This document shows, in pieces, positions 11,231-55,830 of a stretch of DNA of 64,000 nt; position 1 is the first letter of the stretch; each line of letters begins with the position of its first letter. A program made the position numbers and the translations under genes. Below the pieces are notes generated by a model that was not told where the DNA came from, did not search any database, and worked only from the letters and a program-made list of their open reading frames with translations. Source of the DNA: Antechinus flavipes (Eukaryota); assembly GCF_016432865.1 (NCBI RefSeq), contig NC_067400.1, positions 577,096,001 to 577,160,000 of the forward strand. Reading direction: 5' to 3'.

Positions 11231-13212
11231 GTGGAAGCTTAATGTGTTTTGAAGCATCAATAGGGTTCAGGTAGGCTGAGGAGAGGAGGAAGGCAGTTAT
11301 TGGATGAGTGCTAATATTGTCATTCTGGTGTTTGGTAAGAAGAACCTACGTGTATAGAGATGGATAATTCTCAGAGATATGTAAAGAAAGCCTGACAGAA
11401 CAGGTAACAGATTGGATGTGCTCAGTGAAGGAGAAGGAAGGGTCCCAGCCTTTCAACTTGAGTGGCTGGAAAGTACCATTAGCAGCAATGTGGAAATGGG
11501 CAACATGGTTTGGGAAGGTTCTCCATGATTGTAGGCCCTCAGAAAGGGTCCTCTTTCTCCAAGGGAATAGTAGAGTCACAGGATCATAGATTGGAAAGGA
11601 CCCAAGACCAGGAAAGGACCCAGATCCAACCCTTTAATTTTATAGATGAAGAACTGAAGCATAGAGAGGCTAAGTGATTTCATAGAATCATAAATCTAGA
11701 GCTATAAGGAACTTCTGAGACCATATACTCAAGCCTACTTTTTTGTCAGATGAAAAAACTGAAGTTTAGAGAACTAGAGTAATTTGCCCAGTCCCAAAAG
11801 CAGAGCCAAGAATTTGAACCCAAGTTCTCTGTCTCCCCATATAGCACTTCTTAGGTAATGAGGTATAGTGGCATTAGGGGATCTGGGTTCTTGATTGTGT
11901 CTGAATACAGTTTAAAGAATACTTTTTTAAAAAACTTTATTTTTTTTGGAAGGTTTTTTTTTTTTTTGGTGTGAGGGGGAAATCTATCTTTTCTTTTGAA
12001 ACGACTCTTATGGAAATGCTTTGCATAATTTTAGATGTGCCTTCTCATTGGGAGTGGAGTGGGGAGGAAAGGAGAGAATCTGGAACTCAAAGTTTCAAAA
12101 ACAAATGTAAAAAAATGTTTTAAATGTAACTGGGGAAATAAAAATATTTTTAAAAAGAGATCTGGGTTTTAAAGCTATCTCAGAAACTTGTCAAGGGAAA
12201 AACCACTTGATCTTTTTGACCTCAACAAGCATTTATCCAGTGGTTACTATGTGTAAGGCAGTGTATGCTAAACCCCTGAGAACCTAAAGGAAGACAAAAA
12301 CAAGCTCTTTGCTCTCAAGGATATATATTCTAATAGAAGAGAAAACATGCAAATAACCAGGTATAAACAAGATATACAATGTGTAAATAGAAGGTATAAA
12401 GAGGATTGTAAAAACAGAGATAGTCCAGGCTTCCTGTGGGTGCAGCTCTGGGCCATCTGCTTACTTGGGTGGCTTTCCCTGGCTGTCTATATTTGAATTC
12501 TCTGCTCTGTTTGCCTCTTGTTTTTTCCTTCCCAAATCCTCATCTCCACAATCACTTAGAGACAAATCTAACATCAGCATCAAAGCCTTTTGGCTTTGTT
12601 ATCTACAGGTAACTTCAGAAGGAGGAGAGGGATCAGTTTCCTCTTTGGGGCTATGAACAAGAATTGCTGCCTTTCTGATCCTCCAGTTTAAATGCCCTAC
12701 CTTGCTGATTGTGACAACAGGCTGAGATGAAAGATTCCAAGAGGTCATTTCCCTGAAAGCACTCATTCATTCACCATATGCTTTATTAAACACCTGTTGT
12801 GTTTTAGGCATCAGATCTGGTGGGGAGGGGAGGGTTAAAGAGGGTCAGGGGAAGTACAAAGAAGATTAAGAAGTGCCTCTGTCCCCAAGGAAATCAAACC
12901 TAGGAGGAAAGATTAGAAAAGTACACAGATAAAAATAATAAAAATTAAAATTTGATAAGTACAGAGCAGAAGTACAAAGTGCTAAGAGATTAGATGAGGA
13001 ATCAGATGGGGATTCTTTTGATATGAAATCAGGGATCTTTTGATGTAAGAGCTGGCACACAGAACCATCTGGAGCATTTGGCCCATTAGAAAAGCAGAGT
13101 TTGGAAAAGAAATGGGAGAGGAAACCCTAACCCAGCCAGAGGAGAAGGAACCCCAGTCAGGCCGCAGGAGAATTAAACTATTTCCAGATATTCTCTGGAT
13201 AACCTAATTTTT

Positions 13213-19090: not shown

Positions 19091-19197
19091 GGCTGGGGAT
19101 GGTGTGTGGAGAGGGCAGAGCAGCTGAGCAGGGCCTCGTAGGAGCAGGCCGCAGACACCTTCTCCTGCCCCGTCCGGCCCTCGCTGACCACCCAACC

Positions 19198-19717
19198 ATG
19201 AGCTTGACCGGGCCGACCACGGGCTCTGGAGCTTGCGAGTGCCAAGGGGGAGACAGCCAGCATGCCATTCTGTATTCGTTGCTGAGCCGGTCCCGGGGCC
19301 CCTCGCCTCACACCCACTGTCTCTGTGCCCGGCACCGCACAGTCTGCCTCCGGGCCCCCCAACAAACCTGCGTGGCAGCAGCGGGGGTGCTGGCTAAGAC
19401 AGTCGCCTTCCTGCAGTACCTGCCCTCGTTTGCCTTGCTGCCTCCAGGGGACCAGAGGCTGCTGCTGGTCAACTCCTGGGCCCCTCTCTTCCTCCTAGGG
19501 CTGGCCCAGGATGCAGTGACCATCGAGGTGACTGAGATGCCAGCCCCCAGTATGCTCAAGAAGATTCTGCTGGAGGAGAGGAGTCCAGAACCCCAGACTC
19601 CCCAGGCCACCCTTGCAGGGGTCTATCGGCTCCAGTGCTGCCTCCATACCTTTTGGAGTCTGGACCTGAGCCCCAAGGAATACGCCTACCTAAAGGGAGC
19701 CATCCTCTTTAACCCTG
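19198..19717 (+). CDS. NR0B2: Small heterodimer partner, coding exon 1
   Basis: MSLTGP...AILYSLLS...VLAKTVAFL...LFLLGLAQD...MLKKILLEE...[17 protein letters not shown], an atypical nuclear receptor LBD with LxxLL-like boxes; donor G|gtgagt, phase 1. Confidence 0.97.
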
Positions 19718-20683
19718 GTGAGTGCAAGCTCTCCCCTGTGTCACCCCCACCTCCCTTTCAGGTAATCACCTTGATACCTTACCCAGGGTCCAAATGTTCC
19801 CTGATCTTCACATAGGCAGTTTCTGTGGGGAATCTGGAGGCAGAAACCCTAAATATAAGAAGAATAAGGGCTCAAAACCACCAGGACACCCTCCACATAC
19901 ACACCTCCTTAGGAAAGGAAGAACCTTTGGGGAGAGGGAAGAAGTGTCACCGTGCATATGGTGATGGAGAGATCTGGAGCCACCGGGAAATGTCAGACAA
20001 GATGATCAGCTCCTCAGCCCCAGACCTCTTCTTAGCAAAGTCCTAGCCTGGCTGTGAGAGTGATGGAGACAATGTAGTGAGGAGAGGACTGGATCTGGAG
20101 TCAGAGGACCTGGGTTCAAATGCTACCTCTGTGATTAACTCACTGTATGGCAAACATTCTGGGCCACGATCTCATCTATGGAATGAAAAGCTCTGATTTG
20201 TTTAGCATTTTCAGTCGTACCAACTCTTGGGACCCCACTGGGAGTTCTCTTGGCAAAGATACTGGGGGGAATAGTTGGCCATTTCCTTCTCCAGCTCATT
20301 TTACAAAGGAAGAAACAGGTAAACAGAGTGGAGTGATTTGCCCAGGCTCATACCAGGCAACATCTGAACTCAGGCCTTCCTCACTCTAGGTCCAATGCTC
20401 CATCCCCTGCACCACCTAGCTGCCCTCAGGTTTGACTTGATATCCTCTAAGCACCCTTCCAGAACTAAATCCTATGTCCAATGAGAGACGATGCAAACAT
20501 TTATGGAGCCTTGGTCTTAATAATAGAGAGAAAAGAGCTATGTGGAAAAAGTCATAAAACAACAGGCAAGTTCCAGTTACAATAAAAGAATTTTGTATAT
20601 AAAGTGCTGGACAGAGCAGAGGATGTTAGGATGATCACAAGTCTTCCTGGAAGGGGATCTCTGGAACAATGTTAAGGCACTGA

Positions 20684-38269: not shown

Positions 38270-39220
38270 GTGCTTCAAACCTGTTCCCACTTCCGGGGAA
38301 CCCTCGTGTCAGGCGTTCCCCAAGTGCTGGAGTAAAAATGACAGGAACAAAATCAAGGGTCCCCTGTCTCTGCCCCGAGACCCCACGTGACTAGTAGGTT
38401 ACTGGTTCGGGTGAAAAAGGGGAAGAAAGTTTGCGTGAAATCGTGAGCCCATTTGACATACAAAGAAATGTTTCCAGGAGTCTGTGGAGCCGCTTCCTCC
38501 GACGATGTTTCCCGGCCTGCAGGAGGCGCTCCAGTCCAAACCTTGACCGCTTCCGAGACTGTTGGGCTGCTGATCTCGGATTCCTGGATCAAGGAAGTGA
38601 CGTAAATCGCGGTCTGAATTATCATCCTCCTAGTTTCACCACTTCCTCTCGCGAGATCCCGAGGAAGCCTGTCATGTGACCATCCAAAATGGCGGCGCCC
38701 AGTGCTGCTGCGATGGCAGCTGAGAACTCAGCTCCCGTGTATTTGGTGGTGAGCGGGATCCCCGCGGGCCTGCGCTCGGCCCAACTGAGGAACTACTTCA
38801 GCCAATTCCGAGAGCAGCGCGGCGGCCGCGACGCCGGCTTCCTCTGCTTCCACTATCGGCACCGACCTGAGCGGGCTCTGGCCCCGGAACCGGCCCCTGT
38901 CTCAGCACCCGCAGCCCCAGCCTGCGATCCCGCTCATGTCCAAGCCCCGGCCTCCCCGACCCAGACTTCCCATCTGCCGGCGGCTCCTGCTCTGTCTTCA
39001 GCCGCAGTCCCTCCCTCCACCTGCTGCTGCGTGATCTCGGTGCGGGGGCCAGCCCAGGCCGAGCGGTTCCTCCGCATGTACTCGGGCCGCCCTTGGCTCG
39101 ATTCTCAGGGCAACTGGCTGCCCGGACGCTGCCGCATCCGCAGGCTCCGGCTCCCCCTGCAGGAGGCAGGTAAGGACCTCCTCCTCAGACGCTACGACTT
39201 CGACGCCCCTATCTATCAAT
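38270..39220 (+). promoter_or_regulatory. GPATCH3: GPATCH3 CpG-island promoter
   Basis: ETS ACTTCCGG at about 38289; CACGTGAC 38384; GGAAGTGACGT at about 38593; TCTCGCGAGA 38647-38656; GTCATGTGAC 38671-38680; AAAATGGCGGC over the ATG. Confidence 0.8.
38689..39169 (+). CDS. GPATCH3: G-patch domain-containing protein 3, exon 1
   Basis: VYLVVSGIPAGLRSAQLRNYFSQFRE..FLCFHYRHRPE..TCCCVISVRG..RMYSGR.WLDS.G.WLPGRC; donor G|gtaagg. Confidence 0.95.
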
Positions 39221-40844
39221 CAGTACACACTTATTAAGTGCCTGCTATGTGTCAAGCCCTGTGCTAAGCTCCGGCGATACAAAAAGGGACCACAGTTCCT
39301 GCCCTCCAGGAGCTTACACTCTAATGAGGGAGGCAACATGCAAACAAATACATCCAGGGCAAGCTATAGACAGCTATGCACAGGACAGGTAGATGGCCCA
39401 TTGAATAGAGCTGGGCCCGGAAGTCTGGAAGATCTGAGTTCGATTCAGCCTCAGAATCTAGCAAGTCATTAACCTGTTTGCCTTCATCTTCTAGAGCTCG
39501 ACAAATCGGCAAAGCACTCCGGTATTTTTGCCAAGAAAACCCCAAGGACAGTGTGGCTCACAGGTTTGAGAAGAGCTGGGCACGATTCAACTACAAAACA
39601 AAGCCATTGTATATAGGATGAATAGGAAATAATTACCGGAGGGAAGGCACTAGGGTTGAGCAATTGGAAAAGGTTTCCAGTGAATGATGGAATTTTAATT
39701 GGGACTTAAGGCCAGGGAGGATAAGAGTCTGAGAAGGAAAGAATGCCTTCTAATCATGAGGAACAGCCAGAAGCAGGGCTTTGGGGGGAAGGGGGAGAAA
39801 AATGAGGTTGTGGGATCACAGTAGTAAGAGCCTCCCTGGCTATCATATAACCTAATTACTCACATTTTACAAATGAGAAAACTGAGATGCAGAAAGGGGA
39901 AAGGATCTTGTACAAATGCACAATGACTCGAAAATAAGTGCTTAATATATACTTATTGGTCAAGTGATCAAAATGAGATTTTCACTTGATCTTGTACCTC
40001 CAAATCCAGTTTTCCCACTACCACATACTGCCTAGAAGGACTTTGTGGAAAAGCAGAACTGAGGTGCTCCATTTCCTTAAATCAATTCTATACTTCTGTC
40101 GACTTGGTGTCTTAGAATACAAGCAAATGGGAGTCCTGGCACATCAAGATAGTATTCTAGGTCTAGACAGAAGAATTACCAATAAGAAGACAAATAATAC
40201 TAACCAAACCAGGATAGATTTCCACTTAAAATTTTAAGTTTTGGTTTGAGATGAGCCTCCATTTTTCTAGAGGTCTTCTCCTGGATTCTTTTCTCCTATT
40301 TTCTTCCACTAATGAACACTAATCCAGTTCACATCACTTCTCTAATAAATCCCCTTAACTAGGGTAAGTGGCAGAAAGAAATGGAAGCTTTATTTTCACC
40401 CCCTCTCTCCATGGAAAGACAGAATTCCAAAGACTCATTAAAAAATAGAACTGGAATTCTTGAAGTGACCTTTCACAAGCCACTCATTCTCTAGCCTGGT
40501 TTAATCTTCATCAGAGCCAGGGGTTTAGAGAAAAAAAAAAAAAAAAAAAAAACGTTTCTCATAAGGTCAAAGATCTTTTCCTAATTCTCCCTCCTATATA
40601 CACACACAATCTACTATTGGGCTCAAGGGACTGTAGTAGGCACTGGAAAGAAAAATAGCAGTAGGACATAGACATTCTTGAAGAGATTACAATCTAATGC
40701 AAAAGACATATATTGTCATAACTATACGTGATAGAGCAGGTAAGTGTAAAGGACAGGTACAGGGAAAATGGAAAGAAATCTGCTGGGGATATCTTCATGG
40801 AAGAATTAGTATCTCATTTGGACTTCAAAAGAACATAATACCTT

Positions 40845-41035
40845 CCAGCTTTTTAAACATTGATTGTGACCCCACATGGGATCTCATAACTGATTATGGG
40901 GGTTACAAAATTATGATTTATTATCAGTAAATTTTGATTTATATACATGTTTTATATACTTATATACCCAGGGTCATGTATAAATTTCTCAGATGAAAAG
41001 GGGTCACAAGTAGAAAAAAGTTTAAGAAGCCTCAA
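40845..41035. mobile_element. hAT-like MITE (related copy at about 53187-53380)
   Basis: Termini ..cttttttaaac / gtttaagaagc..; shared internal attatgattta and aaatttctcag. Confidence 0.6.
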
Positions 41036-41362
41036 ATGGGCCATATAGAGCTAGCAGGGATCTTACAGCTTGTTTTAATCAACCTCTTCATGTTTCAGAT
41101 GAAGAAACTGACACCTGTCAAGGATAAGTAGCTTGGCCAAAGTCACACACTTCATATGGGTGGTAGAGTCATGATGTAAATGGGTCCCAGACTAGGCACA
41201 TCAACCATCCAACAACATGCCTAAGGTACAGAGGATCCAGCCAAGGGTTTTAAAAGCAATCTCTTAACTCAGAGCTGTGGAGATGGGAGTTCATTCTGTC
41301 CACAAGTCTATACACAATTATTTGTGCATTTGTTTCAAGATTTTTTCTTATCTTTATCTAAG

Positions 41363-41781
41363 GTGTTGATCCCTTTCCTTTCAAGACCCGGAAAGAGTTG
41401 CATAGGAGAAGGACCACAAGTGAAGCTTTCACACTGGCTGACCTCACACAGCTACCAGAACTGAACCCTCCAGCCTTGATGCCCAATGGGAACGTGGGTA
41501 CCCCAATGCGTATCTTCTTAGAGCTGATCCGAGCCTGTCGTTTGCCCCCTCGCATCATTACACAGCTGCAGCTGCAGTTCCCCAAGACAGGCTCCTCCCG
41601 GCGATACGGCAATGTGCCCTTTGAGTATGAAGACTCAGAGACTGTCGAGCAGGAAGAGCTGGTGTACACAGCACAGGGGGAGGAGATCCCAGAAACCCCC
41701 CAACGAACTTTGCCCACACCCATCACAACTGGGACCCAAGAAGAGCCAAAAAAAGACGAAGAGGAATCTCATTCAGATGAT
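41363..41781 (+). CDS. GPATCH3: GPATCH3 exon 2
   Basis: FPFKTRKEL...LPELNPPALMPNGNVGTP..FLELIRACRLPPRIITQLQLQFPKTGSSRRYGNVPF...ESHSDD|gtgagt. Confidence 0.95.
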
Positions 41782-44249
41782 GTGAGTTCAGTGACATTGT
41801 CCTGTCTTGGTTGACCACACTAAAGGCCCAGTCATTTATTATTAATTACTGCTATTAGTATGAGTTAATTCCATTTGCTTTCATATACGTTCTCTGATTT
41901 GATCCTCACAGTTGTCCTGGAGTTCAGCAGTCCAAGCATAAATATTCCTGTTTTATAGTGGTGGAGTCAGGCCTCTTAATTCTCAGACGCTATTTCCACT
42001 ATAACAAGTTACCCAATTTGTCATAGTTACAGATTTCTATCATTAATAATAATGTTATATGCATAGAGCACTTTTAAGATTTGCGCTTTCCAACAATCCT
42101 CTGAAGTACATGCTACAATATTGTTGTTCAATCATTTCAGCTGTGTCTGACCCTTCATGACCCCATGTGGGGTTTTCTTAGCAGAATATTGGAGTGGTTT
42201 GCTATTTCCTCCTCCAACTTATTTTATGATATTTTAAAAAATTTTATAGTTAAGGAAATTGAGGCTAACAGGGTAAATTGACTGGCTCAAGGTCACACAG
42301 CTAGTAAGTGTCTGGCCAGATTTAAACTCAAGAAGATGGATCTTTCTGACTCCCAATCCAGCACTCTAAGCACTGAGCCACTTGGCCCCGAATTACTAAT
42401 GAAGAAACTTAGACTTTAAGAAGTTGTGACTTCTTTTTCTTATCCAGCTTGTAAGGTTTAGGAGTGATTAGAGATTTGAAACCAGTTCTCTTGATTCCCA
42501 AGTCCAACTGTCTTTGTATATTATACTATCCGGATTTTTGTCTTTACCACCATACTTTACTTTTCTATAATGAGGGTAAAAGGAAACTGATTTTAAATGG
42601 GTAATAAACTTCTGGTCTGCCTGATGAAATAGAACCAGTACATATGAAGTGGAGACTAGTAATTGTATTTGTCTAAACCTGACTTCAGAAATGGCTTTAA
42701 GAAAAAAATAATATAAGCACACGCTAAAAAAAAAAATCAACCCATCCATTATAGGCTGCCAACCAGTGGTATGTGGATTAATCATATTCACATCATAGAG
42801 TTGGAAGGAAGGGAGCTCAGAAGTCACCAATGAAATGGGTACTGAAATCATTATTTACAATGGAACCATCCTCAATAAGGAGTCTTTATCTTCAGCTTGA
42901 AGGCTTTAATGATTGAAAACTTTCTACCTCCAGAGGCAGTTCATTCCCTTTAGAACAAGCTCTGATTGTTAGGAAGCTTTCCCTGATATCAAATCTAAAT
43001 CTGCCTCTTATGGTCTCCATCTATTGCTCCAGACACAGGACAAATTAGAGTTCCTAAAAGTACTGATGGTTCAAAACCTTCCCCACATAATAGACTTTTT
43101 GAAAATTAGAATGAATCAAACAGAAGTTAATGACTCCCTGAGACAAGAAGAAATATTAAAGTCAAAAGACTAAAAAATTAGTCAAGCAGAATAAAACTGA
43201 TCTTTCTTCTGTGTGATAACAACCCTCTAAATCCCTAAAGACAGTCACTTATCCCCAAGCCTGAATTGGGCAGTTAGTACAATATTGGTACCATAATGGA
43301 AGTGAGTTGGATACAAGGAATAAAAATAGGCTGAGGTGATAGGCGAAAGAAGACTTCAGGTGATATCTTTAAAAGGCTCTTAGGGGAAAAAATGTAGGAA
43401 GCACATTGCAAACTTAAGACACTATATAAATGTCAGTAGATTATGATTTGATTTGATTGATCATGATTATGATCAAAAAGGATAGGGAGAATTGGATGAG
43501 GGGAATGAAAAAGGCAATCAATAAATGGACTGAGCAATGTCACCTGGAGGTGACAATGAGACTGATAGTATGCATGAGAAACAGTATAGGGCCAGCCTGG
43601 CTGAAATGTTTTAGAGCATGGGAAGGTAAAGCTGAATCAGTAATAATAGTAATAATAATAGTTCATAGGTCTGTAGCACTATAAGATTTACAAAGTGTAC
43701 TCTTCACAATCATCCTGTAAGGTCAGTAGTGTAAATGCTCTCATCCCCACTTGACAGAGAAAAAAACTAAGGCTGAATAAGGTACTTACATAAGGTAATG
43801 TGAAGACAGCTACATGGTAAAGTGGATAGAGTGCTGGGTCTGGAGTCAGGAAGACATGAGTTCAACTCTGGCTTCAAATACTTATTAGCTGTGTGATCCT
43901 GGGCAAGTCACTTCACCCTGTTTGCTCCAATTTCCTCACTGTAAAATGTGCTGTGGAAGGAAATGACAAACCAGTGTGGTATCTTTGCCAGGAAAACCCT
44001 AAAGAAAATCACAAAGAATTGGACACAAATGAACAATGACAAGATGATATAATTAATAATGTCAGGACGAGGATTTGAGCCCAGCTTTGAACCCTCAAGC
44101 GGCATGGTGTCACGAGGGATGTGGAGGCCAGACAGTCCCTCTGAGATAAGCCAGTCTTTTCGTGGCCTTGGCCCAATTTCCCTGCCCCCTTCACCTCCTG
44201 TTGGAGGGTGCCCTGTGGCAGCTCAATCCTCCCCCTGCTTCCTTTGCAG

Positions 44250-44424
44250 GACAATGACACGTGTGAGGAGTGGGAACGACATGAAGCCTTGCATGAGGAT
44301 GTGACAGGCCAGGAACGCACCACAGAACGGCTTTTTGAGGAGGAGATTGAGCTCAAATGGGAGAAAGGCGGCTCTGGGCTCGTGTTTTATACAGATGCTC
44401 AGTACTGGCAGGAAGAGGAAGGAG
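44250..44424 (+). CDS. GPATCH3: GPATCH3 exon 3
   Basis: ttgcag|DNDTCEEWERHEALHEDV...ELKWEKGGSGLVFYTDAQYWQEEEG|gtaata. Confidence 0.95.
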
Positions 44425-45635
44425 GTAATAAGGCTCACAGTTCTTCAGTGCTTTATAGTATGCAGAGTGTTTGTATGTCATTATCTCATCTGACTCTCAT
44501 GTTACTACCCCCATGGGAAAAACAGGGCAGTTATGGCATCCCAGTGCAGGACCTGGAGAGGAACAATCCCTCTGCCCAGGCCATAAAGTACAGAGTTGGA
44601 TCTGAAACACAGGTTTTCTGGCCACGAGGCAGTATTCCTTCTCTGCTACTGGATGTAATTCCACCTGGGCCCTGGGCAGCAGAGGAATGGATCTGTCACT
44701 GGGATACCCATGAACTTCAGTTTGAACACCTAAGTGCTCCCAGGGGATTCTGTTTGACATGCTTCCTTTACACTTTACTTACAACTACCGTGTAAATTTT
44801 ACTTTTTAAATACATTTTGTTTTGACATAATGGGCTAGCATTTAAAAAAAAAAGATACAAACATGCATGACTGTATAGTCTTGAAAACCACTAAGCAAGA
44901 ATGTAAAATTCCTTTTTGGTCTAAACTGGTGATTTCATTTATGCAGGCAAACTCCCCCATCAGTGCAGATAGGCCTCTCTTTGATAGCATCCCTTTTTCC
45001 TCTCTTTCCTTTCTTCTTTGAAGAGCATCAAAATATAAAAGCCATTTCCAGGGCTTTTTTCTTATGTAATTCCTCTATGATCCTTGATAACATTAGAGTT
45101 CTGAGGAGGCACTTGTACCATTAGAATGCAAGTCCTTGATTTGTGTTGAAGTTTCTCGTGGCTCTCATGTTCTCTTTCAAGACTTTGAAAGCAGCTCTGA
45201 TCTTTTCAGGAATTTTTTAGAAATCTTCTATTTCATTAAAAAGGCATACTTTCCCCCCCTCTAGGATTATACCCACTTTTGGTAACTAAGTTCTTCTTGG
45301 TTACCAGATATTATCTTTTTTGCCTTTTGGAATACTCTGTTCCAAGATCTCTACTCTCTTATAGAAGCTTATTTTTTCTTTGGTCTGGAAGCTCTAGATT
45401 TTATCTATTGTGTTTCCTGGGAGTTTTCCCATGGCAGGATGAATGAGCAAGATACAGGGATTCTTTCAGGAAATAATTCTCTTTTCATGTTATTCTTTGG
45501 TTCTAATAAATCTGAGCAGTTTTCTTTCATGGTTTCTTGAAATATTATGTCCAGGTGGAGGTGGAGGAGGTGGGAGAGGGGAAAGCAGAAGGTATATGTC
45601 ACAGTTTTGTGGTAATATAATGATTCCTAAATTAC

Positions 45636-45637
<2 letters not shown>

Positions 45638-45677
<40 letters not shown>

Positions 45678-45818
45678 TTTTTTGCTGAGGCACTTGGGAT
45701 TAAGTGACTTGCCCAAGGTCATACAGCTAGGAAGTGTTAAATGTCTGAGGCCAGATTTGAACTCAGGTCCTCCCGACTTTAGAGCTGGTGCTCTATCCAC
45801 TGCACCAATTAGCTGCCC
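45638..45818 (-). mobile_element. Young CORE-SINE with microsatellite tail and TSD
   Basis: TSD CCTAAATTACCT (45626-45637 and 45819-45830); tail (GTCT)n(CT)n(T)n on the + strand. Confidence 0.88.
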
Positions 45819-46969
45819 CCTAAATTACCTCTCAATCTATTTTCCAAGTAAGTTGTTATTGCTTTGAATTGCCTTCCATTTTCTTCTATTTTTTTTAGTC
45901 TTTTGACTTTAGTATTTCTTGTTTCAGGAGTCATTAATTTGTTTGTTTCATTCTGATTTTCAGAGTCTTATGTGGGTAAGGTTTTGAATCTCTTGAACTG
46001 AGCAGTTAATTTTCCTTCCAAGTGTTTCCTCCAAAGTTCTCATTTCTTCTCTCATTTCTAGCACTATCTCATTTCATTTAAAAAATCATTTAATTATTAA
46101 AAAAAAAAAAAAAAAGCAAAACCTCTTCATTTCATTTAGGAACTCTGATTTATCCTGTGTCTGGGCATTTTTCTGTAGATGTTGTGGAGTCATTCTCTTC
46201 TTCTGGATTTGAGTTTTGGGCATGTCTGATTCCATTGTAGTTCTTTAGTATGGGAGTCTTTTTGTTTGTTTCATTTATTGTTCCAGAATTATTTATTGAA
46301 TTAGGGTTTTGTGTCAGGGCCTAGTTCTGTGTACTTCTGGAAAGAATTTCTGAGCTAGATTTGCTTCTGCCTTGTTCTCCAATCCTGCATCTACTTTCTC
46401 TGAATATTGAGTGCTCAGGGATCTTAGAGGCAGCTCAATGTAAGGACTTCTGGGTCCACTATAAGACTCTGCAGTCTTTTAACTTTGTAACTTATTGTTT
46501 ATGCTTTGGTAACAATTTAGTGTCAACATCATCCACTGTGTTTGACAGTTTTGTTGCCATTTAATGATGTTTTTTAATTTGCATTGTTGAAGAAAGTATC
46601 TTTTAGTAATGCTTTTGTCATTCTCTATCTCTTTATACATGTTTTCCCATTTTTTCTTTGAATTTATCTGTCATTCCTTACAATGCAGTAATATTTCATA
46701 ACTGCAAATTATGCAGCTATTCCCAAAATGTAATTTTTCAAATTCCTGCAAAAAGAACACAACCTACAACAACTATGTGAGAAAATGGTTCAGATCAGTA
46801 GTAATATGAGAAATACACCTATCAGATTGGCAGCAATGACAGGAAACAAAACTGAAAGACCAAGGGCCTGTAGGAAGCCAGGTATATCTCTGGGAAATTG
46901 TGAATTGTTTCAGTGGTTTCAACCATTCTAGAAAACAATCGAGAGTTACCCCAAGAAAGGCAAAGACAT

Positions 46970-47456
46970 GCTGAGTGAAATGAGCAGGACTAGAAGATGG
47001 TTATATACTTCAACAACAATACTATATGATGATCAATTCTGATGGACATGGCCATCTCCAGCAATGAGATGAACCAAATCAGTTCCAATAGAGCAGTAAT
47101 GAACTGAACCAGCTACACCCAGCAAAAGAACTCTGGGAGATGACTATGAACCAGTACATAGAATTCCCTATCCCTCTATTTTTGTCCGCCTGCATTTTTG
47201 ATTTCCTTCACAGTTCTGGCTAATAGTACAGTATTTCAAAGTCCTATTCTTTTTGTACAGCAAAATAACTGTTAGGATATATATGCATTAACATACTTAA
47301 CATTGTATTGGTCAACCTGCCATCGGCGGGGAGGGGATGGAGGTAAGGAGGGGAAAAATTGGAACAAAAGGCAACTGTCAATGCTGTAAAATTACCTATG
47401 CATATATCTTGTAAATAAAAAGCTATAATAAAAAAATAATAATAATAATAATAAAA
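46970..47456 (+). mobile_element. Young L1 3' end inserted into an older L1
   Basis: 17-bp TSD AAGAAAGGCAAAGACAT (46953-46969 and 47457-47473); (AAT)n-type tail; host L1 ORF2 at about 46750-47950. Confidence 0.9.
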
Positions 47457-48114
47457 AAGAAAGGCAAAGACATAAAAAGGACCTATAGGTAATTTTATAG
47501 CAGCTCTTTTATAGTAGCAAAGAAGAAGGAATAAAGTGTGTGCCCTTTAGTTGGAAGATTTCTGAATAAATCATGGTGTATGGATCTATAAGACATTATT
47601 GATGCACTGAAACTAAAAATATCAGGAATTCAGAGTTGGGACACCGTGTATGAATGGATACAAAATGAAGCAAGCAGAACCAGGAAAACAATCTGCATGG
47701 TGACCCCGACAGAGTGTAGCTCACATCAGTGCATCTGCCAATCTTAACTGCAGAGGACCAATGGTGAGACATACCTTGCTTCTCTTGGTAGCAACATGAT
47801 AGGCTATAGATGTGGAATGAGTATGTATTCCCAGACATGGTCAATGCTTCTATTTGTTTAGCTTAGCTTTATCCCAAGGGAGGCTTTTACTTGGGTCTGG
47901 AGGTGGTGATTGGGAAGCCACAGCAGTTTTTGTTTTAAAATATCAGTAAGCTTTTAAAAAAAAAAAAAAAAGCATAGAGATATACTCCCCTATCCTGCCC
48001 TCAAAAATGGCAGGCATTCTGAGAAGCAGAGGGCAATACATTCTAGGTAGAAGGAGTAGCATATGGAAAATCATGGAAATTGAAAATGTCTTCCTCTGTG
48101 TCTTGTCCCTGCAG

Positions 48115-48174
48115 ATTTTGATGAGCAAACAGCTGATGACTGGGATGTGGATATGAGCATATACTATGATCGAG
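48115..48174 (+). CDS. GPATCH3: GPATCH3 exon 4
   Basis: 60 nt, (D)FDEQTADDWDVDMSIYYDR, AG/GT boundaries, phase 1-1. Confidence 0.95.
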
Positions 48175-48924
48175 GTAATTGGCCTAGCATGGCTCTGGGG
48201 GGCAGATGTCCTGTTCTTGGGTGACTTTCAGGCCTCCTTGACCTCCTTTCCCCCAGCCCAAGAGAGGAAGTGAGGGAATGAGTGTGGAGTTGGAGGCTGT
48301 CCTTTTTCCCCATGATTTGGTGAATAAGTGAAAGAGTACCATCTAGGGTACTCTTTTTACAATTTTATTGGTCTTTAATCTTTAATTTCTAAAATAAATG
48401 CTTTTTGGGAACTGAGAAAGTAGAGGAAAATATTAGAAGAAAAGTTAGAAGGAGGAAAAAGAAACAGCCCCAAACTCAGATTTTTAGGGTGACAATGGTC
48501 CCATCCTTGAGAATTGTCCCCATTCTGACAGAATGAGGCTTGAACTTTGGTAGAACTTTTCCATTGCCCTCTGGGAGTTTCTGGTCTGGTTACAGGCACA
48601 GTTACTACCTTGAAAAAGCCCAAGTCTGATGGGAAAATACAACTTTGACTCTCAGGAAGCCCATATAGACTGAGGAAGATACACAGTCTTTGTTATTTAG
48701 TGTAGCCTAGTCTGAAAGTTAAAGAAGTGAGACACTACCTGCACTCAGGGACTTACTGGTCTGATCAGGAAGAGGTCACAGAAACATGCAATGGAAACCA
48801 AAATGAGAGGAATCTAGCCCTGACTGGGTGCCATGAAAGCTTTCTGCCTCAGTCCCATCTCTGTACTGAATGTACCTTTGGCTAGGACTTTAGCCTCCTC
48901 CTAAATTAGGCTCTGGTTTCTTAG

Positions 48925-49022
48925 ATGGTGGAGACAAGGATGCTCGTGACTCCGTCCAGATGCGCTTGGAACAGAGACTTCGTGATGGCCTGGAGGATGG
49001 CACCTTTCAGCATCACACAAAG
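48925..49022 (+). CDS. GPATCH3: GPATCH3 exon 5 (with a 24-nt in-frame deletion)
   Basis: (D)GGDKDARDSVQMRLEQRLRDGLEDGTFQHHTK|gtgagc; 98 nt. Confidence 0.92.
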
Positions 49023-49113
49023 GTGAGCCTAATGTTTAATCCACATTTCAATTCCCTCTTCTCCACTTCCCATTTGTAGCTGGAAAGCTCTTGTCCTGTT
49101 CTTTCCTCTCCAG

Positions 49114-49227
49114 GGTATTGGAAGGAAGGTGATGGAGCGACAAGGCTGGGCTGAGGGACTTCGTAATGGCCTGGAGGATAGCTCTGTGGTCAGCCACCAA
49201 GTTGTTTCCTTTGAGCATCACACAAAG
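49114..49227 (+). CDS. GPATCH3: Putative chimeric GPATCH3 exon A (5' half of exon 6 fused to 3' half of exon 5)
   Basis: ctctccag|GIGRKVMERQGWAEG-LRNGLEDSSVVSHQVVSFEHHTK|gtgaac; 114 nt, no stop. Splicing not verifiable from DNA. Confidence 0.55.
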
Positions 49228-49308
49228 GTGAACCTAATGTTTAATCCACAGTTCAATTTCCTCCATTTGTGGATGGAAAGCCCTTGACTCCTGTTCTTTC
49301 TTCTCCAG

Positions 49309-49422
49309 GGTATTGGAAGGAAGGTGATGGAGCGACAAAGCTGGGCTGAGGGACTTCGTGATGGCCTGGAGGATAGCTCTGTGGTCAGCCACCAAGTTGG
49401 CTCCTTTGAGCGTCACACAAAG
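49309..49422 (+). CDS. GPATCH3: Putative chimeric GPATCH3 exon B
   Basis: ttctccag|GIGRKVMERQSWAEG-LRDGLEDSSVVSHQVGSFERHTK|gtgagt; 114 nt, no stop, consensus donor. Confidence 0.6.
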
Positions 49423-49516
49423 GTGAGTCTAATGTTTAATCCAGATTTCAATTCCCTCCTCCACTTTCCTTCATTTGTGGCTGGAAAGCCCTTGACTCTT
49501 GTTCTTTCCTCTCCAG

Positions 49517-49644
49517 GGTATTGGAAGGAAAGTGATGGAACGACAAGGCTGGGCTGAGGGCCAAGGCCTGGGCAGTAACTGCTCAGGAGTGGCTGAGGCC
49601 CTGGACAATGATGGGCAGAATCCCAGATGTAAGCGGGGATTAGG
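49517..49644 (+). CDS. GPATCH3: GPATCH3 exon 6 (intact G-patch)
   Basis: GIGRKVMERQGWAEGQGLGSNCSGVAEALDNDGQNPRCKRGL(G)|gtaagt; 128 nt. Confidence 0.95.
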
Positions 49645-50560
49645 GTAAGTGTGCTTGAGATTGCAGCAAAGCCAGCTTGTCCAGCTCCCAGCCTTCCCAG
49701 GTCTTGAGAATTCCTTAGCTCCCTCCAACAGCTTGGGTTGGAGGATTTGGGCTTGCTGATTTGGGAGTAGGAAGCTAGAAAGCTGGTGCACTTTCTTGTC
49801 ATGGAGTTTGTGGAAGATTTGAAAAGATAAGCAATGATAAAGTCAGAATGAATGGATGGATGCTGTGTCAGCCATAATTTTGACAGTCACCTTGTTGCTC
49901 CCATCGTGGCCCAATCAAATGCCCTGGAGTTAAGGGCTAAAGGCACACACACACCCCGCTTTAATTCCTCCCTAATGAGCTGGTCATGATGACCACAGGT
50001 ACTTATTTAGTAGGAGGATGGGAAGCAATCATACGATCTAGATTTGAGTACTGACATAGTTACTGGTCTGTGTACCTCTCAGAAGTCACCTTCTTGAGAT
50101 CTGTTTTCTCATCTGTAAAATAGCTGCTCTGTCTGCCTCACAGGACTTATTGTGGAGAAAATAGAAATGGGAACTGTTCTTATTGTCATTCATTCATCTC
50201 ATTTTCAAGGTGGTCGAGATTGGAGGGAAACAGACCTGGGATAAGTTACATTGCTGCTTTTCTTTTATATTTCATGTTCTCTGGGCTATTGCACATATGG
50301 ATAAAAGTGCTAGCACCTTTTATAATGAAATACAAGTGTTGCAATGTTAGCTTATCTTGTGTGGCCTTATTGACAGTACCTTGGGGACCGCTCAAGGAAC
50401 ACAGACGATTGGGATTTGTCCACACAATTTTGATTTATTTATACATTTGTCGAAACAAATGCTGGGAGTTTTCCCATGTCCCTCCTACTTAGGATGGGGA
50501 AGCTGGAGATTCCCTAGTTTCGTTATAATATAACCAAGGGTCTCTCTCTCTCTCTCTCAG

Positions 50561-50783
50561 ATACCATGGAGAGAAATTGCAGTCTTTTGGACAGCCTAAG
50601 AAACCACGTGGGACAAGCCTGGGGCTCATCTCCACAATCTATGATGAACCCCTTGCTCAGGACCAGGGTGACGACCTGCTTCGACGCCAGCCACCTACCA
50701 GCCTGAAGTTCCGTGCAGATATGACCTTTGTGAGAGGCTCAGACCTGGACAGCTTTTCCCACAACTCATCAGAGCCTGAATGA
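50561..50783 (+). CDS. GPATCH3: GPATCH3 exon 7 (terminal)
   Basis: (CT)n ag|(G)YHGEKLQSFG...LGLISTIYDEPL...LLRRQPPTSLKFR.DM.FVRGS...*. Protein is 527 aa without, 603 aa with both chimeric exons. Confidence 0.95.
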
Positions 50784-54739: not shown

Positions 54740-55830
54740 CCAAACCCCCTCGCGCGGCTTAGCCTGAAGGAGCACTGGACCTGAATTCCCGCAGAAGCTA
54801 CGAACTTCCTACACTACATCAAGGAGCTTTACAAAGTTCTATTTATCCCCGAAGGGCACATTCTCCCCCAAACCCAAAATGGGGGAATTCGAGATTCTCT
54901 CAAAGCCCCGGGGGCCTCTCTGTGGAGCCCCGAGGCGGAGAAGGCTTGTGGCTGGTCAGAAAGCACTCACTAAAATTCTAACACCCACTCTCCCATTTAC
55001 AGGTAAAGCCCCAGAGCAACAGCAGCAAGCCGCCGGCCGCCCGCCTCCCCCGCCAGCTATTCCAACGTTCCCGCGCGCTTCCTTTAAAATGCGTCGTACG
55101 CAAACGCGCCGAAAAACAACTTCTACAGAGAAGGCGGGACTTCCGGGAGGCGCGTTCAGTTTCGAACCAACGTCGCTGACTTGGGGGGAGATCTCGAGTT
55201 GTCCAGCACGGGACGTGAGCCGTCATCGCGGCTATGGCCATGGCCACTACGGCCACGGCCGAACCCACGACTTTTGGACAAGCGGTGATCGGGCCTCCGG
55301 GCTCGGGGAAAACCACGTACTGCCTGGGCATGAGCACTTTTCTGGCGGGGTTGGGCCGGCGAGTAGCCGTGGTTAACCTAGACCCGGCCAACGAGGGCAC
55401 GCCGTACGCATGCGCCGTGGACATCGGCGAACTAGTGACGCTCCCCGACGTGATGGAGGCGCTCAAGCTGGGGCCCAACGGCGGCCTCGTGTACTGCATG
55501 GAGTACCTGGAGGCCAACCTGGACTGGCTGCGCGATCGCCTGGCGCCGCTCCGCGGCCACTACCTGCTCTTCGACTGCCCGGGCCAGGTGGAACTGTGCA
55601 CGCACCACGGCGCCTTGCGCAGCGTCTTCGCGCAGCTGGCCCGGTGGGGCTTCCGGGTGAGCCCCGCCCCGCCCCGGAAATGTGGCTCTGGCCCCGGCGG
55701 AGCACGTGCTCGAGGCTGCCGGGAGCTGCCTGCTGTGCCCTAGGGGGCGGTCTTCCCCTTCATGTGGGTCGATTATCCCTACGTGAACACTAACGTGCCT
55801 TTCTGGCGCGACTAGACCCAGCATTGCCCG
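54740..55830 (+). promoter_or_regulatory. GPN2: GPN2 CpG island/promoter
   Basis: High CpG density; E2F-like TTCCCGCGC at about 55068; GGCGGGA and ETS ACTTCCGG at about 55134-55147. Confidence 0.75.
55234..55656 (+). CDS. GPN2: GPN-loop GTPase 2, exon 1
   Basis: P-loop [17 protein letters not shown] loop GPNGG and FDCPGQVEL; donor CGG|gtgagc. A second in-frame ATG lies at 55240. Confidence 0.97.

What the first reader, a model, noticed from the sequence alone, without database searches (positions are those of the whole stretch)
48976..49644. GPATCH3 intragenic triplication creates two in-frame chimeric exons, each adding an extra half G-patch
Seen in sequence: three diverged tandem copies of [exon5 3' half - intron 5 - exon6 5' half]. 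The mid-exon junction GCT GAG GG|A CTT CGT is in frame. It yields two new 114-nt exons (49114-49227, 49309-49422), phase 0-0, stop-free, each with a pyrimidine-tract AG acceptor and an AAG|GTGA donor. They encode GIGRKVMERQ(G/S)WAEG-LR(N/D)GLED...HTK. Established knowledge: G-patch motifs activate DEAH helicases such as DHX15/Prp43, using an N-terminal brace-helix (G-x2-h-h-x2-h-G-W) on the winged-helix domain and a C-terminal GLG brace-loop on RecA2. Inference: this animal may make GPATCH3 isoforms with one, two or three brace-helices in front of a single brace-loop (527, 565 or 603 aa). Every skipping combination stays in frame, so this could be a splice-tunable helicase-binding array (avidity or decoy). 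The intron copies carry indels (91/81/94 nt) while the two chimeric exons carry none, which hints at frame conservation. Against strong protein-level constraint, all 5 nucleotide differences between exons A and B are nonsynonymous.
Basis: partly seen in the sequence, partly recalled or inferred. Interest (0 to 1): 0.9.

Follow-up and report, generated by a model that had tools for sequence, protein, structure and literature searches.

The report
Dasyurid GPATCH3 half-G-patch exon triplication
In carnivorous marsupials (dasyurids) the helicase-cofactor gene GPATCH3 carries an in-frame triplication at least 20 million years old; its two extra exons, each encoding half of the helicase-binding motif, are real and already in public gene models, but any function of the extra half-motifs is untested.

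Summary
Window 48977-49561 holds 2.8 tandem copies of [exon 5 3' half - intron 5 - exon 6 5' half]. They create two 114-nt, phase 0-0, stop-free exons (A 49114-49227, B 49309-49422) with intact splice sites.

The window is Antechinus flavipes GPATCH3. RefSeq isoform X1 (603 aa) threads exactly onto these exons. Public annotation already lists 603, 565 (B only) and 527 aa forms for Antechinus and Sarcophilus, and a 596-aa two-repeat form for Sminthopsis. Six non-dasyurid marsupials have one copy.

The three copies are orthologous across the dasyurids, so the triplication predates their split about 21-29 Ma ago. A and B have no indel or stop in any species and keep all GT/AG. The intron copies carry 7 indel events. 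Neutral pseudo-exons are rejected at about p=4e-4.

Protein-level constraint is relaxed: dN/dS is 0.43-0.48, against 0.17 gene-wide and about 0.05 for the true G-patch exon. Antechinus exon B has lost the invariant Gly before Trp.

The 3' half of B keeps the vertebrate-invariant flank before the G-patch. Native exon 5 lost 8 codons and is drifting.

Best reading: bona fide, mostly included exons forming a tolerated insert. A splice-tunable helicase-binding array remains speculative.

The parts
38689..50783 (+). GPATCH3 coding span (9 coding exons in this animal: 38689-39171, ~41365-41781, 44250-44423, 48114-48173, 48925-49022, 49114-49227, 49309-49422, 49517-49644, ~50562-50783 with stop)
   Evidence: RefSeq XP_051844069.1 (P0272, Antechinus flavipes isoform X1, 603 aa) threads exactly onto these blocks. 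The boundaries of split codons are approximate.
48925..49022 (+). Native exon 5 (98 nt). Its 3' part from 48977 is the first copy of the duplicated segment.
   Evidence: The 3' 46 nt show 4 variable sites among the three dasyurids, against 1 in the 5' 52 nt.
48998..49001 (+). Scar of a 24-nt (8-codon) deletion in exon 5, lying in a TGGC microhomology
   Evidence: Copies A and B, koala and Dromiciops all keep the 8 codons. All three dasyurids lack them in exon 5.
49023..49113 (+). Intron copy 1 (91 nt)
49114..49227 (+). Chimeric exon A (114 nt, 38 codons): exon 6 5' half (brace-helix motif) fused at 49158|49159 to exon 5 3' half
   Evidence: The brace-helix part is identical at the protein level in the three dasyurids.
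49228..49308 (+). Intron copy 2 (81 nt; 15-nt and 1-nt gaps relative to Sminthopsis, shared with Sarcophilus)
49309..49422 (+). Chimeric exon B (114 nt, 38 codons), junction at 49353|49354. Its 3' half carries the vertebrate-invariant flank G-x-F-E-x-x-T-K just before the true G-patch. Its brace-helix has Ser in place of the invariant Gly before Trp (codon at 49339-49341).
49423..49516 (+). Intron copy 3 (94 nt), the intron in front of the intact G-patch exon
49517..49644 (+). Exon 6 (128 nt): the complete G-patch (brace-helix, GLG linker, brace-loop)
   Evidence: Pfam PF01585, E=1.5e-10, 41.3 bits. dN/dS 0-0.07 among dasyurids.

Best explanation
This is a real and old tandem triplication of a roughly 200-bp segment, with breakpoints inside exons 5 and 6 of GPATCH3. 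It arose on the dasyurid stem, after the split from bandicoots and bilbies and before the Dasyurinae/Sminthopsinae split.

Each copy carries the donor of exon 5, the short intron 5 and the acceptor of exon 6. The two new 114-nt chimeric exons therefore inherited working splice signals.

My inference is that the three 81-97-nt introns are each removed by intron definition. Both exons would then be included in the principal mRNA (603 aa), with minor skipped forms (565 aa with B only; 527 aa).

The insert adds two copies of [brace-helix half of the G-patch + the 23-residue segment that normally precedes the G-patch], directly in front of the intact G-patch.

Selection keeps the exons open and spliceable, because a frameshift or stop in them would remove the essential G-patch downstream. 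Their amino-acid sequence is only weakly constrained.

The 3' half of exon B has taken over the ancestral role of the conserved flank in front of the G-patch. The end of native exon 5 lost 8 codons and is drifting.

The extra half-motifs are most likely a tolerated insert in a disordered region, with at most a modest effect on DHX15 binding.

Shown: the anatomy, the age, the orthology, the frame and splice-site conservation, the relaxed dN/dS, and the match to public gene models. Inferred: predominant inclusion, intron definition, and near-neutrality of the peptide.
For: Anatomy.

Identity with RefSeq isoform X1, and the 603/565/527 models in Antechinus and Sarcophilus plus the 596-aa model in Sminthopsis.

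Single copy in Macrotis, Petaurus, Notamacropus, Phascolarctos, Dromiciops and Monodelphis (520-546 aa). The single-copy DNA was checked in koala and Dromiciops.

The copies group by position rather than by species. They share position-specific marks: the 24-nt deletion in copy 1, GTT/CAT in copy 2 and GGC/CGT in copy 3. The crown-Dasyuridae split is dated at 20.6-28.6 Ma and the Peramelemorphia split at 47.6-64.4 Ma (PMC5715987).

Exons A and B are 114 nt in all three species, with no indel or stop and all GT/AG kept. The three intron copies have 7 indel events and 11.1% variable sites, against 6.6% in A+B. The binomial p for the indels is 0.014. The joint probability under intron-like neutral evolution is about 4e-4.

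dN/dS for A+B is 0.43-0.48, against 0.16-0.17 for the rest of the gene and 0-0.07 for exon 6.

In an alignment of 42 vertebrate sequences, the invariant G480, F482, E483, T486 and K487 fall in the 3' half of exon B. The end of exon 5 has lost E in Antechinus and G in Sminthopsis.

The AlphaFold2 model gives pLDDT below 50 for residues 403-487, which is the insert.

The ancestral intron 5 is already short: 106-107 nt in Dromiciops and koala.
Against: No transcript reads could be examined. Inclusion rests on automatic gene models from two pipelines.

Spliced short reads across these junctions are ambiguous. The first 15-45 nt after each acceptor and the last 13 nt or so before each donor are identical between copies. 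This affects both the included and the skipped models.

Neutrality of the peptide is not demonstrated either. The brace-helix of exon A is unchanged at the protein level in all three species, with 2 synonymous changes. The last 49 nt of A and of B are as conserved as true exons (2 variable sites in 98 nt). Synonymous change in A+B is lower than the gene average (5 observed, 11 expected, p=0.036). These points could reflect function, splicing enhancers or gene conversion.

Gene conversion is evident in Sminthopsis and blurs rate estimates.
Confidence: 0.65

Rival explanations
1. One reading: a splice-tunable helicase-binding array. The extra brace-helices bind the winged-helix site of DHX15 without activating it. 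They would act as a decoy, or would raise the local concentration (avidity). Regulated skipping of A and B would set the number of helices.
For: In NKRF, a G-patch with a disabled brace-loop (L591E) still partly binds DHX15, 'probably via the brace-helix', but no longer stimulates the helicase (PMC7132122). A helix-only unit could therefore plausibly bind without activating.

Human GPATCH3 binds DHX15 and stimulates its ATPase (PMC12375585).

The brace-helix of exon A keeps every vertebrate-invariant residue in all three dasyurids. Three isoforms are annotated in two species. The frame has been kept for more than 20 My.
Against: dN/dS of A+B is about 3 times the gene average and neutrality of the peptide is not rejected (p=0.22).

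Antechinus repeat B has Ser in place of the Gly described as completely invariable. The brace-helix of repeat B has 4 replacements among three species.

Frame conservation is explained equally well by the need to reach the downstream G-patch. No evidence of regulated splicing is available.
Confidence: 0.17
2. The exons are mostly skipped in vivo. The 603-aa models are over-predictions by pipelines that extend open reading frames or misplace ambiguous spliced reads, and the ancestral-type 527-aa protein is the working form.
For: Sequence identity around the junctions makes short-read splice alignment ambiguous. Skipped models are annotated in Antechinus and Sarcophilus. In Antechinus, intron copy 1 has lost the AC of the likely branch-point motif CTTGAC.
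Against: Rarely included pseudo-exons should accumulate indels and stops. None is seen in 228 nt across three lineages, and the joint neutral probability is about 4e-4.

The end of exon 5, which would flank the G-patch in the 527-aa form, lost 8 conserved codons and has lost invariant residues in two species. The 3' half of exon B keeps those residues.

For Sarcophilus and Sminthopsis, NCBI lists only the fully included form in this cluster.
Confidence: 0.12
3. The structure is an assembly artefact, or arose by recent independent duplications in each species that only look shared.
For: Tandem repeats of about 200 bp can be mis-assembled. Lineage-specific states shared by paralogous copies in Sminthopsis could suggest young copies.
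Against: Four assemblies of three species show the same three copies. Position-specific marks are shared across species, and the units group by position. The copies are 85-94% identical, not identical.
Confidence: 0.02

Closest known systems
Canonical vertebrate GPATCH3 (human: DHX15 cofactor, G-patch at residues 410-458; PMC12375585, PMC5407853)
   Same: Orthologous gene, with the same neighbours (NR0B2 upstream, GPN2 downstream). The same N-terminal domain, acidic middle region and a single complete G-patch. The G-patch exon is nearly identical to that of other marsupials.
   Different: The dasyurid gene has two extra exons that insert 76 residues before the G-patch, and an 8-codon deletion in exon 5.
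NKRF G-patch bound to DHX15 (PDB 6SH6/6SH7; Studer et al. 2020, PMC7132122), in particular its brace-loop mutant L591E
   Same: Repeats A and B correspond to the brace-helix through the Gly-Trp turn. They lack the GLG linker and the brace-loop. In sequence terms they resemble a G-patch with one end of the tether detached, which in NKRF still binds partly but does not activate.
   Different: No binding data exist for the dasyurid repeats. They occur in cis, upstream of an intact G-patch, rather than as an isolated mutant peptide. Antechinus repeat B lacks the invariant Gly before the aromatic residue.
TFIP11 (Ntr1/Spp382) G-patch
   Same: It shares the extended N-terminal flank ...S-[FW]-E-R-H-T-K-G-I-G... 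with GPATCH3, and is the best hit among solved structures (8ro2, E=3.8e-8). The duplicated unit therefore carries a conserved flank as well as the helix.
   Different: It is a different protein with a single G-patch and no repeats.
In-frame tandem exon duplication yielding cassette or repeated exons (general phenomenon; my own knowledge of Kondrashov & Koonin 2001 and Letunic et al. 2002, not checked here)
   Same: Adjacent homologous exons of equal length and phase, with inherited splice sites and annotated alternative inclusion.
   Different: The breakpoints lie inside two neighbouring exons, so the new exons are chimeras (3' half of one fused behind the 5' half of the next) that split a linear motif. 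The exons are co-included rather than mutually exclusive.

Membership tests
GPATCH3 orthologue | Full-length collinear similarity to GPATCH3 proteins and conserved gene neighbourhood | tested here: met
   Exact threading of RefSeq XP_051844069.1 onto the window. 80-92% identity to other marsupial GPATCH3 proteins. NR0B2-like ORF at 19099-19815 and GPN2-like ORF at 55234-55743.
G-patch domain (Pfam PF01585) | Complete glycine-rich motif scoring above the gathering threshold (22 bits) | tested here: met
   Exon 6 peptide: 41.3 bits, E=1.5e-10, profile positions 3-43 of 45.
G-patch domain (Pfam PF01585), applied to chimeric exons A and B on their own | Complete motif above the gathering threshold, including the GLG linker and the C-terminal brace-loop | tested here: not met
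   Exon A: 15.1 bits (<22), only profile positions 3-17. Exon B: no G-patch hit at E<=1. The sequence after W-A-E-G switches to exon 5-derived L-R-D-G-L-E-D.
G-patch brace-helix (as defined on NKRF, PMC7132122) | Near-invariant Gly at the helix contact point, a hydrophobic residue at the L559 position, and an invariant Gly followed by an aromatic residue | tested here: inconclusive
   Repeat A meets all of these in the three species. Repeat B meets them in Sarcophilus and Sminthopsis, but in Antechinus has Ser instead of the invariant Gly. The mapping onto NKRF numbering is by motif spacing and is my inference. No structure of the repeats is available.
DHX15/Prp43-activating G-patch cofactor | Physical binding to the helicase and stimulation of its ATPase and RNA affinity | not testable with these tools
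   Shown for human GPATCH3 in PMC12375585. Not tested for any dasyurid isoform. The AlphaFold2 monomer model is uninformative here (pLDDT below 50 for residues 403-487).
Tandemly duplicated, alternatively included exons | Adjacent homologous exons of the same length and phase with intact splice sites | tested here: met
   A and B are 114 nt, phase 0-0, 96% identical, with AG and GT kept in three species.
Tandemly duplicated, alternatively included exons | Transcript evidence for alternative inclusion | not testable with these tools
   Only annotation-level evidence: isoforms X1/X2/X3 in Antechinus, and 603/565/527 in Sarcophilus. No reads could be accessed.

The most novel reading that the evidence does not exclude
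Dasyurids would have evolved a G-patch cofactor with three helicase-docking helices but only one activating loop. The helix-only units would bind the winged-helix site of DHX15 without bracing it, acting as a built-in competitor or as a capture antenna. Exon skipping would set their number, tuning DHX15 activation by GPATCH3 (and with it splicing or RIG-I-like receptor signalling) in a lineage-specific way.
Probability: 0.13. Interest if true: 0.6.

Novelty: new variant of a known kind. Interest (0 to 1): 0.35.

Why it matters
G-patch proteins activate DEAH helicases by tethering two helicase domains with one helix and one loop. A natural protein that repeats only the helix half, kept in frame for more than 20 million years, is a ready-made test of what a helix-only unit does next to an intact motif: bind, compete or nothing.

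It is also a clean example of a duplication with mid-exon breakpoints creating chimeric exons that work from the start. A later shift of constraint is visible too: exon B now supplies the conserved flank, while the end of the old exon 5 decays.

The practical weight is limited. The gene models are already public, the evolutionary signal for a function of the peptides is weak, and GPATCH3 itself has few known RNA targets (bioRxiv 10.64898/2026.06.30.735655).

Tried and rejected
(1) Assembly artefact. Rejected: four assemblies of three species agree, and the two Sarcophilus assemblies are identical here.

(2) Independent recent duplications in each species. Rejected by shared position-specific marks and by the unit tree. 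Sminthopsis does show concerted changes (AGA in all three 5' halves, AAGAA in both 3' halves) that point to gene conversion.

(3) Neutral pseudo-exons. Rejected at a joint p of about 4e-4.

(4) Strong protein-level constraint on the repeats. Not supported: dN/dS is 0.43-0.48, and 10 replacement against 5 silent changes on the three-species tree does not differ from neutral (p=0.22).

(5) Direct transcript evidence. I judged that de Bruijn contigs (k=31) of public RNA runs would break at the repeats, which share identical stretches longer than 31 nt, so I ran no further search on it.

(6) The AlphaFold2 monomer with a 42-sequence alignment had mean pLDDT 46. It shows only that the insert lies in a low-confidence, probably disordered stretch. 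No fold search was warranted.

(7) Literature. No paper holds both GPATCH3 and Sarcophilus, and none of the listed GPATCH3 titles concerns marsupials.

(8) Similar repeats elsewhere. The long fish proteins P0016 and P0036 are long because of unrelated inserts.

Full report
**1. What is in the sequence**

Tandem Repeats Finder reports a single array at 48998-49560 with period 195, 2.8 copies and 85% matches. The repeat finder places three copies in register. A three-way alignment shows that each unit is [3' part of exon 5 - short intron - 5' part of exon 6].

The coordinates are as follows.

| Feature | Coordinates | Length |
|---|---|---|
| Native exon 5 | 48925-49022 | 98 nt |
| Intron copy 1 | 49023-49113 | 91 nt |
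| Exon A | 49114-49227 | 114 nt |
| Intron copy 2 | 49228-49308 | 81 nt |
| Exon B | 49309-49422 | 114 nt |
| Intron copy 3 | 49423-49516 | 94 nt |
| Exon 6 | 49517-49644 | 128 nt |

- Both chimeric exons translate without stops into 38 residues.
- The acceptors are copies of the exon 6 acceptor: a pyrimidine tract followed by cag|GGT.
- The donors are copies of the exon 5 donor: AAG|gtgaac for A and AAG|gtgagt for B.
- Exon 6 alone carries a complete Pfam G-patch (41.3 bits).
- Exon A matches only the first third of the profile and falls below threshold. Exon B does not match at all.
- The window has no N runs.

Four of the five differences between A and B are replacements, not all five.

**2. 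Whose gene it is, and what is already public**

A profile-free search with the exon 2 ORF found GPATCH3 proteins. A second search returned a 596-aa GPATCH3 of Sminthopsis crassicaudata among marsupial proteins of 520-546 aa.

Its 90% cluster holds seven sequences:
- Sarcophilus harrisii: 603 aa (NCBI), and 565 and 527 aa (UniProt).
- Antechinus flavipes: isoforms X1 (603 aa), X2 (565 aa) and X3 (527 aa).
- Sminthopsis crassicaudata: 596 aa.

Isoform X1 threads residue for residue onto the window, using exactly exons A and B. The window is therefore Antechinus flavipes.

The 565-aa forms of both species contain exon B only.

I found no paper that mentions this. No paper holds both GPATCH3 and Sarcophilus, and none of the listed GPATCH3 titles concerns marsupials.

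**3. Age and origin**

Petaurus, Notamacropus, Phascolarctos, Dromiciops, Monodelphis and Macrotis have single-copy proteins. I confirmed the single copy at the DNA level in koala and Dromiciops, where intron 5 is 107 and 106 nt.

Loci of Sminthopsis (L001) and of two independent Sarcophilus assemblies (L002, L003, identical in this region) carry the same three copies.

The copies carry position-specific marks that are shared across species:
- a 24-nt deletion in copy 1;
- GTT and CAT codons in copy 2;
- GGC and CGT codons in copy 3.

In a maximum-likelihood tree the units group by position, not by species. Copy 2 has 92/91 support; copies 1 and 3 are weakly supported. The triplication therefore predates the Dasyurinae/Sminthopsinae split.

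Kealy and Beck date that split at 20.6-28.6 Ma, and the split from Peramelemorphia at 47.6-64.4 Ma (PMC5715987).

Copies 2 and 3 share derived states (AGC, TCC) that copy 1 and the outgroups lack. They are probably the younger pair (inference).

Sminthopsis has AGA in all three 5' halves and AAGAA in both chimeric 3' halves, where the other dasyurids have AGG and GAGGA. This is best explained by short gene-conversion tracts (inference).

**4. Are A and B treated by evolution as exons?**

In the three-species alignment, A and B are 114 nt everywhere, with no stop and with all AG and GT kept.

| Segment | Variable sites |
|---|---|
| A+B | 15 of 228 (6.6%) |
| Exons 5+6 | 12 of 226 (5.3%) |
| Three intron copies | 29 of 262 (11.1%) |

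The introns also carry 7 indel events, while none falls in any exon.
- All 7 events falling outside A+B has p=0.014.
- Suppose A+B evolved like the introns. The chance of seeing no indel (0.0027), no stop (0.36) and eight unchanged splice dinucleotide bases (0.39) is then jointly about 4e-4.

They behave as coding exons. The simplest reason is that they lie in the main reading frame upstream of the indispensable G-patch.

**5. Is the encoded peptide constrained?**

Only weakly, and unevenly.

| Region | dN/dS (against Sminthopsis) |
|---|---|
| A+B | 0.43-0.48 |
| Rest of the gene | 0.16-0.17 |
| Exon 6 | 0.05-0.07 |

Between Antechinus and Sarcophilus, A+B has 3 replacements and no silent change. 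On the three-species tree I count 10 replacement and 5 silent changes, which does not differ from neutral (p=0.22).

By segment:
- The brace-helix of A has 0 replacements and 2 silent changes.
- The brace-helix of B has 4 replacements, including Gly to Ser in Antechinus at the glycine that Studer et al. describe as completely invariable and always followed by an aromatic residue.
- The L-R-D-G-L-E-D stretch after each junction is the most variable part: 6 of 40 sites.
- The last 49 nt of A and of B are nearly invariant: 2 of 98 sites, p=9e-4 against the intron rate and 0.10 against the exon rate.

Silent change in A+B is also lower than the gene average: 5 observed against 11 expected (p=0.036). 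This may reflect splicing enhancers or gene conversion, and it inflates dN/dS.

**6. A shift of roles between exon 5 and exon B**

Outgroup marsupials, birds, reptiles and fish carry ...L-R-D-G-L-E-D-G-S-V-V-x-x-Q-V-G-T-F-E-R-H-T-K directly before G-I-G-R-K. In a 42-sequence vertebrate alignment, the invariant G, F, E, T and K of this flank align to the 3' half of exon B (positions 480-487 of the 603-aa protein). Exon B keeps them in all three dasyurids.

Native exon 5 has lost 8 of these codons through a deletion between two TGGC repeats. Its end has 4 variable sites in 46 nt. The invariant Glu is lost in Antechinus and the invariant Gly in Sminthopsis.

The same flank occurs in TFIP11, the best hit among solved structures (8ro2). 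This argues that it matters.

The pattern fits a gene in which the forms that include exon B are the ones seen by selection (inference). It supports my own earlier-scan lead s1-204811.

**7. Mechanism**

Established knowledge: - The G-patch brace-helix docks on the winged-helix domain of DHX15 and the brace-loop on RecA2.
- A brace-helix mutation abolishes binding.
- A brace-loop mutant still binds partly but no longer stimulates helicase activity.

Human GPATCH3 binds DHX15 through its N-terminal region and its G-patch, and stimulates the DHX15 ATPase.

Repeats A and B contain the flank, the helix and the Gly-Trp turn, but not the GLG linker or the loop. They could in principle occupy the docking site without bracing the helicase.

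The AlphaFold2 model is poor (mean pLDDT 46). It places the insert in a low-confidence stretch, with short helices predicted on repeat A and on the true G-patch. Only the N-terminal domain is confident.

I commit to the following:
- The exons are included in the main mRNA because each short intron copy is spliced by intron definition (inference from the 81-97-nt introns, and my own knowledge of intron definition).
- The insert is tolerated in a disordered segment.
- Any effect on DHX15 is modest (confidence 0.65).
- The tunable-array model keeps about 0.15-0.2.

**8. Novelty and verdict**

The feature is real, old and specific to dasyurids among the species with data. The chimeric half-motif architecture was not found in any other fetched GPATCH3 relative.

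The gene models are already in RefSeq and UniProt, and the evolutionary evidence for a function of the extra half-motifs is weak. I rate it a new variant of a known kind, with interest 0.35.

Noticed in passing
window 48998-49001 (exon 5): Exon 5 lacks 24 nt (8 codons, S-V-V-x-x-Q-V-G) that are present in copies A and B and in koala and Dromiciops. The deletion lies between two TGGC repeats and is shared by Antechinus, Sarcophilus and Sminthopsis.
   Followed up: yes
window 49090-49096 and 49077-49079 (intron copy 1): Antechinus alone has lost the AC of CTTGAC, about 22 nt upstream of the acceptor in the other copies and species. This motif is the best branch-point candidate. Nearby, a G-to-A change creates a TAG. 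This might weaken the joining of exon 5 to exon A and favour the annotated B-only isoform.
   Followed up: partly
L001 12577-13045 (Sminthopsis exons A, B and 6): Lineage-specific states are shared by paralogous copies: AGA in all three 5' halves, and AAGAA in both chimeric 3' halves. This pattern suggests short gene-conversion tracts between the repeats.
   Followed up: partly
L001 about 12688-12696 against window 49225-49233: The donor of exon A is AAA|gtgagc in Sminthopsis and AAG|gtgaac in Antechinus and Sarcophilus. The loss of the exonic G is paired with a gain of the +5 G, which looks like a compensatory pair.
   Followed up: no
window 19099-19815 (+) and 55234-55743 (+): The flanking ORFs look like NR0B2 (SHP) upstream and GPN2 downstream. 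To my knowledge this is the same neighbourhood as human GPATCH3.
   Followed up: no
P0272 residues 16-153 (window exon 1): AlphaFold2 predicts a confident (pLDDT about 80) beta-alpha domain at the N-terminus, with no Pfam match. It lies in the region (residues 1-236 in human) reported as also needed for DHX15 binding.
   Followed up: no
P0272 residues 479-490 and PDB 8ro2 chain TF residues 142-153: GPATCH3 and TFIP11 share the flank ...G-S-[FW]-E-R-H-T-K-G-I-G... in front of the brace-helix. This suggests an extended G-patch subtype.
   Followed up: partly
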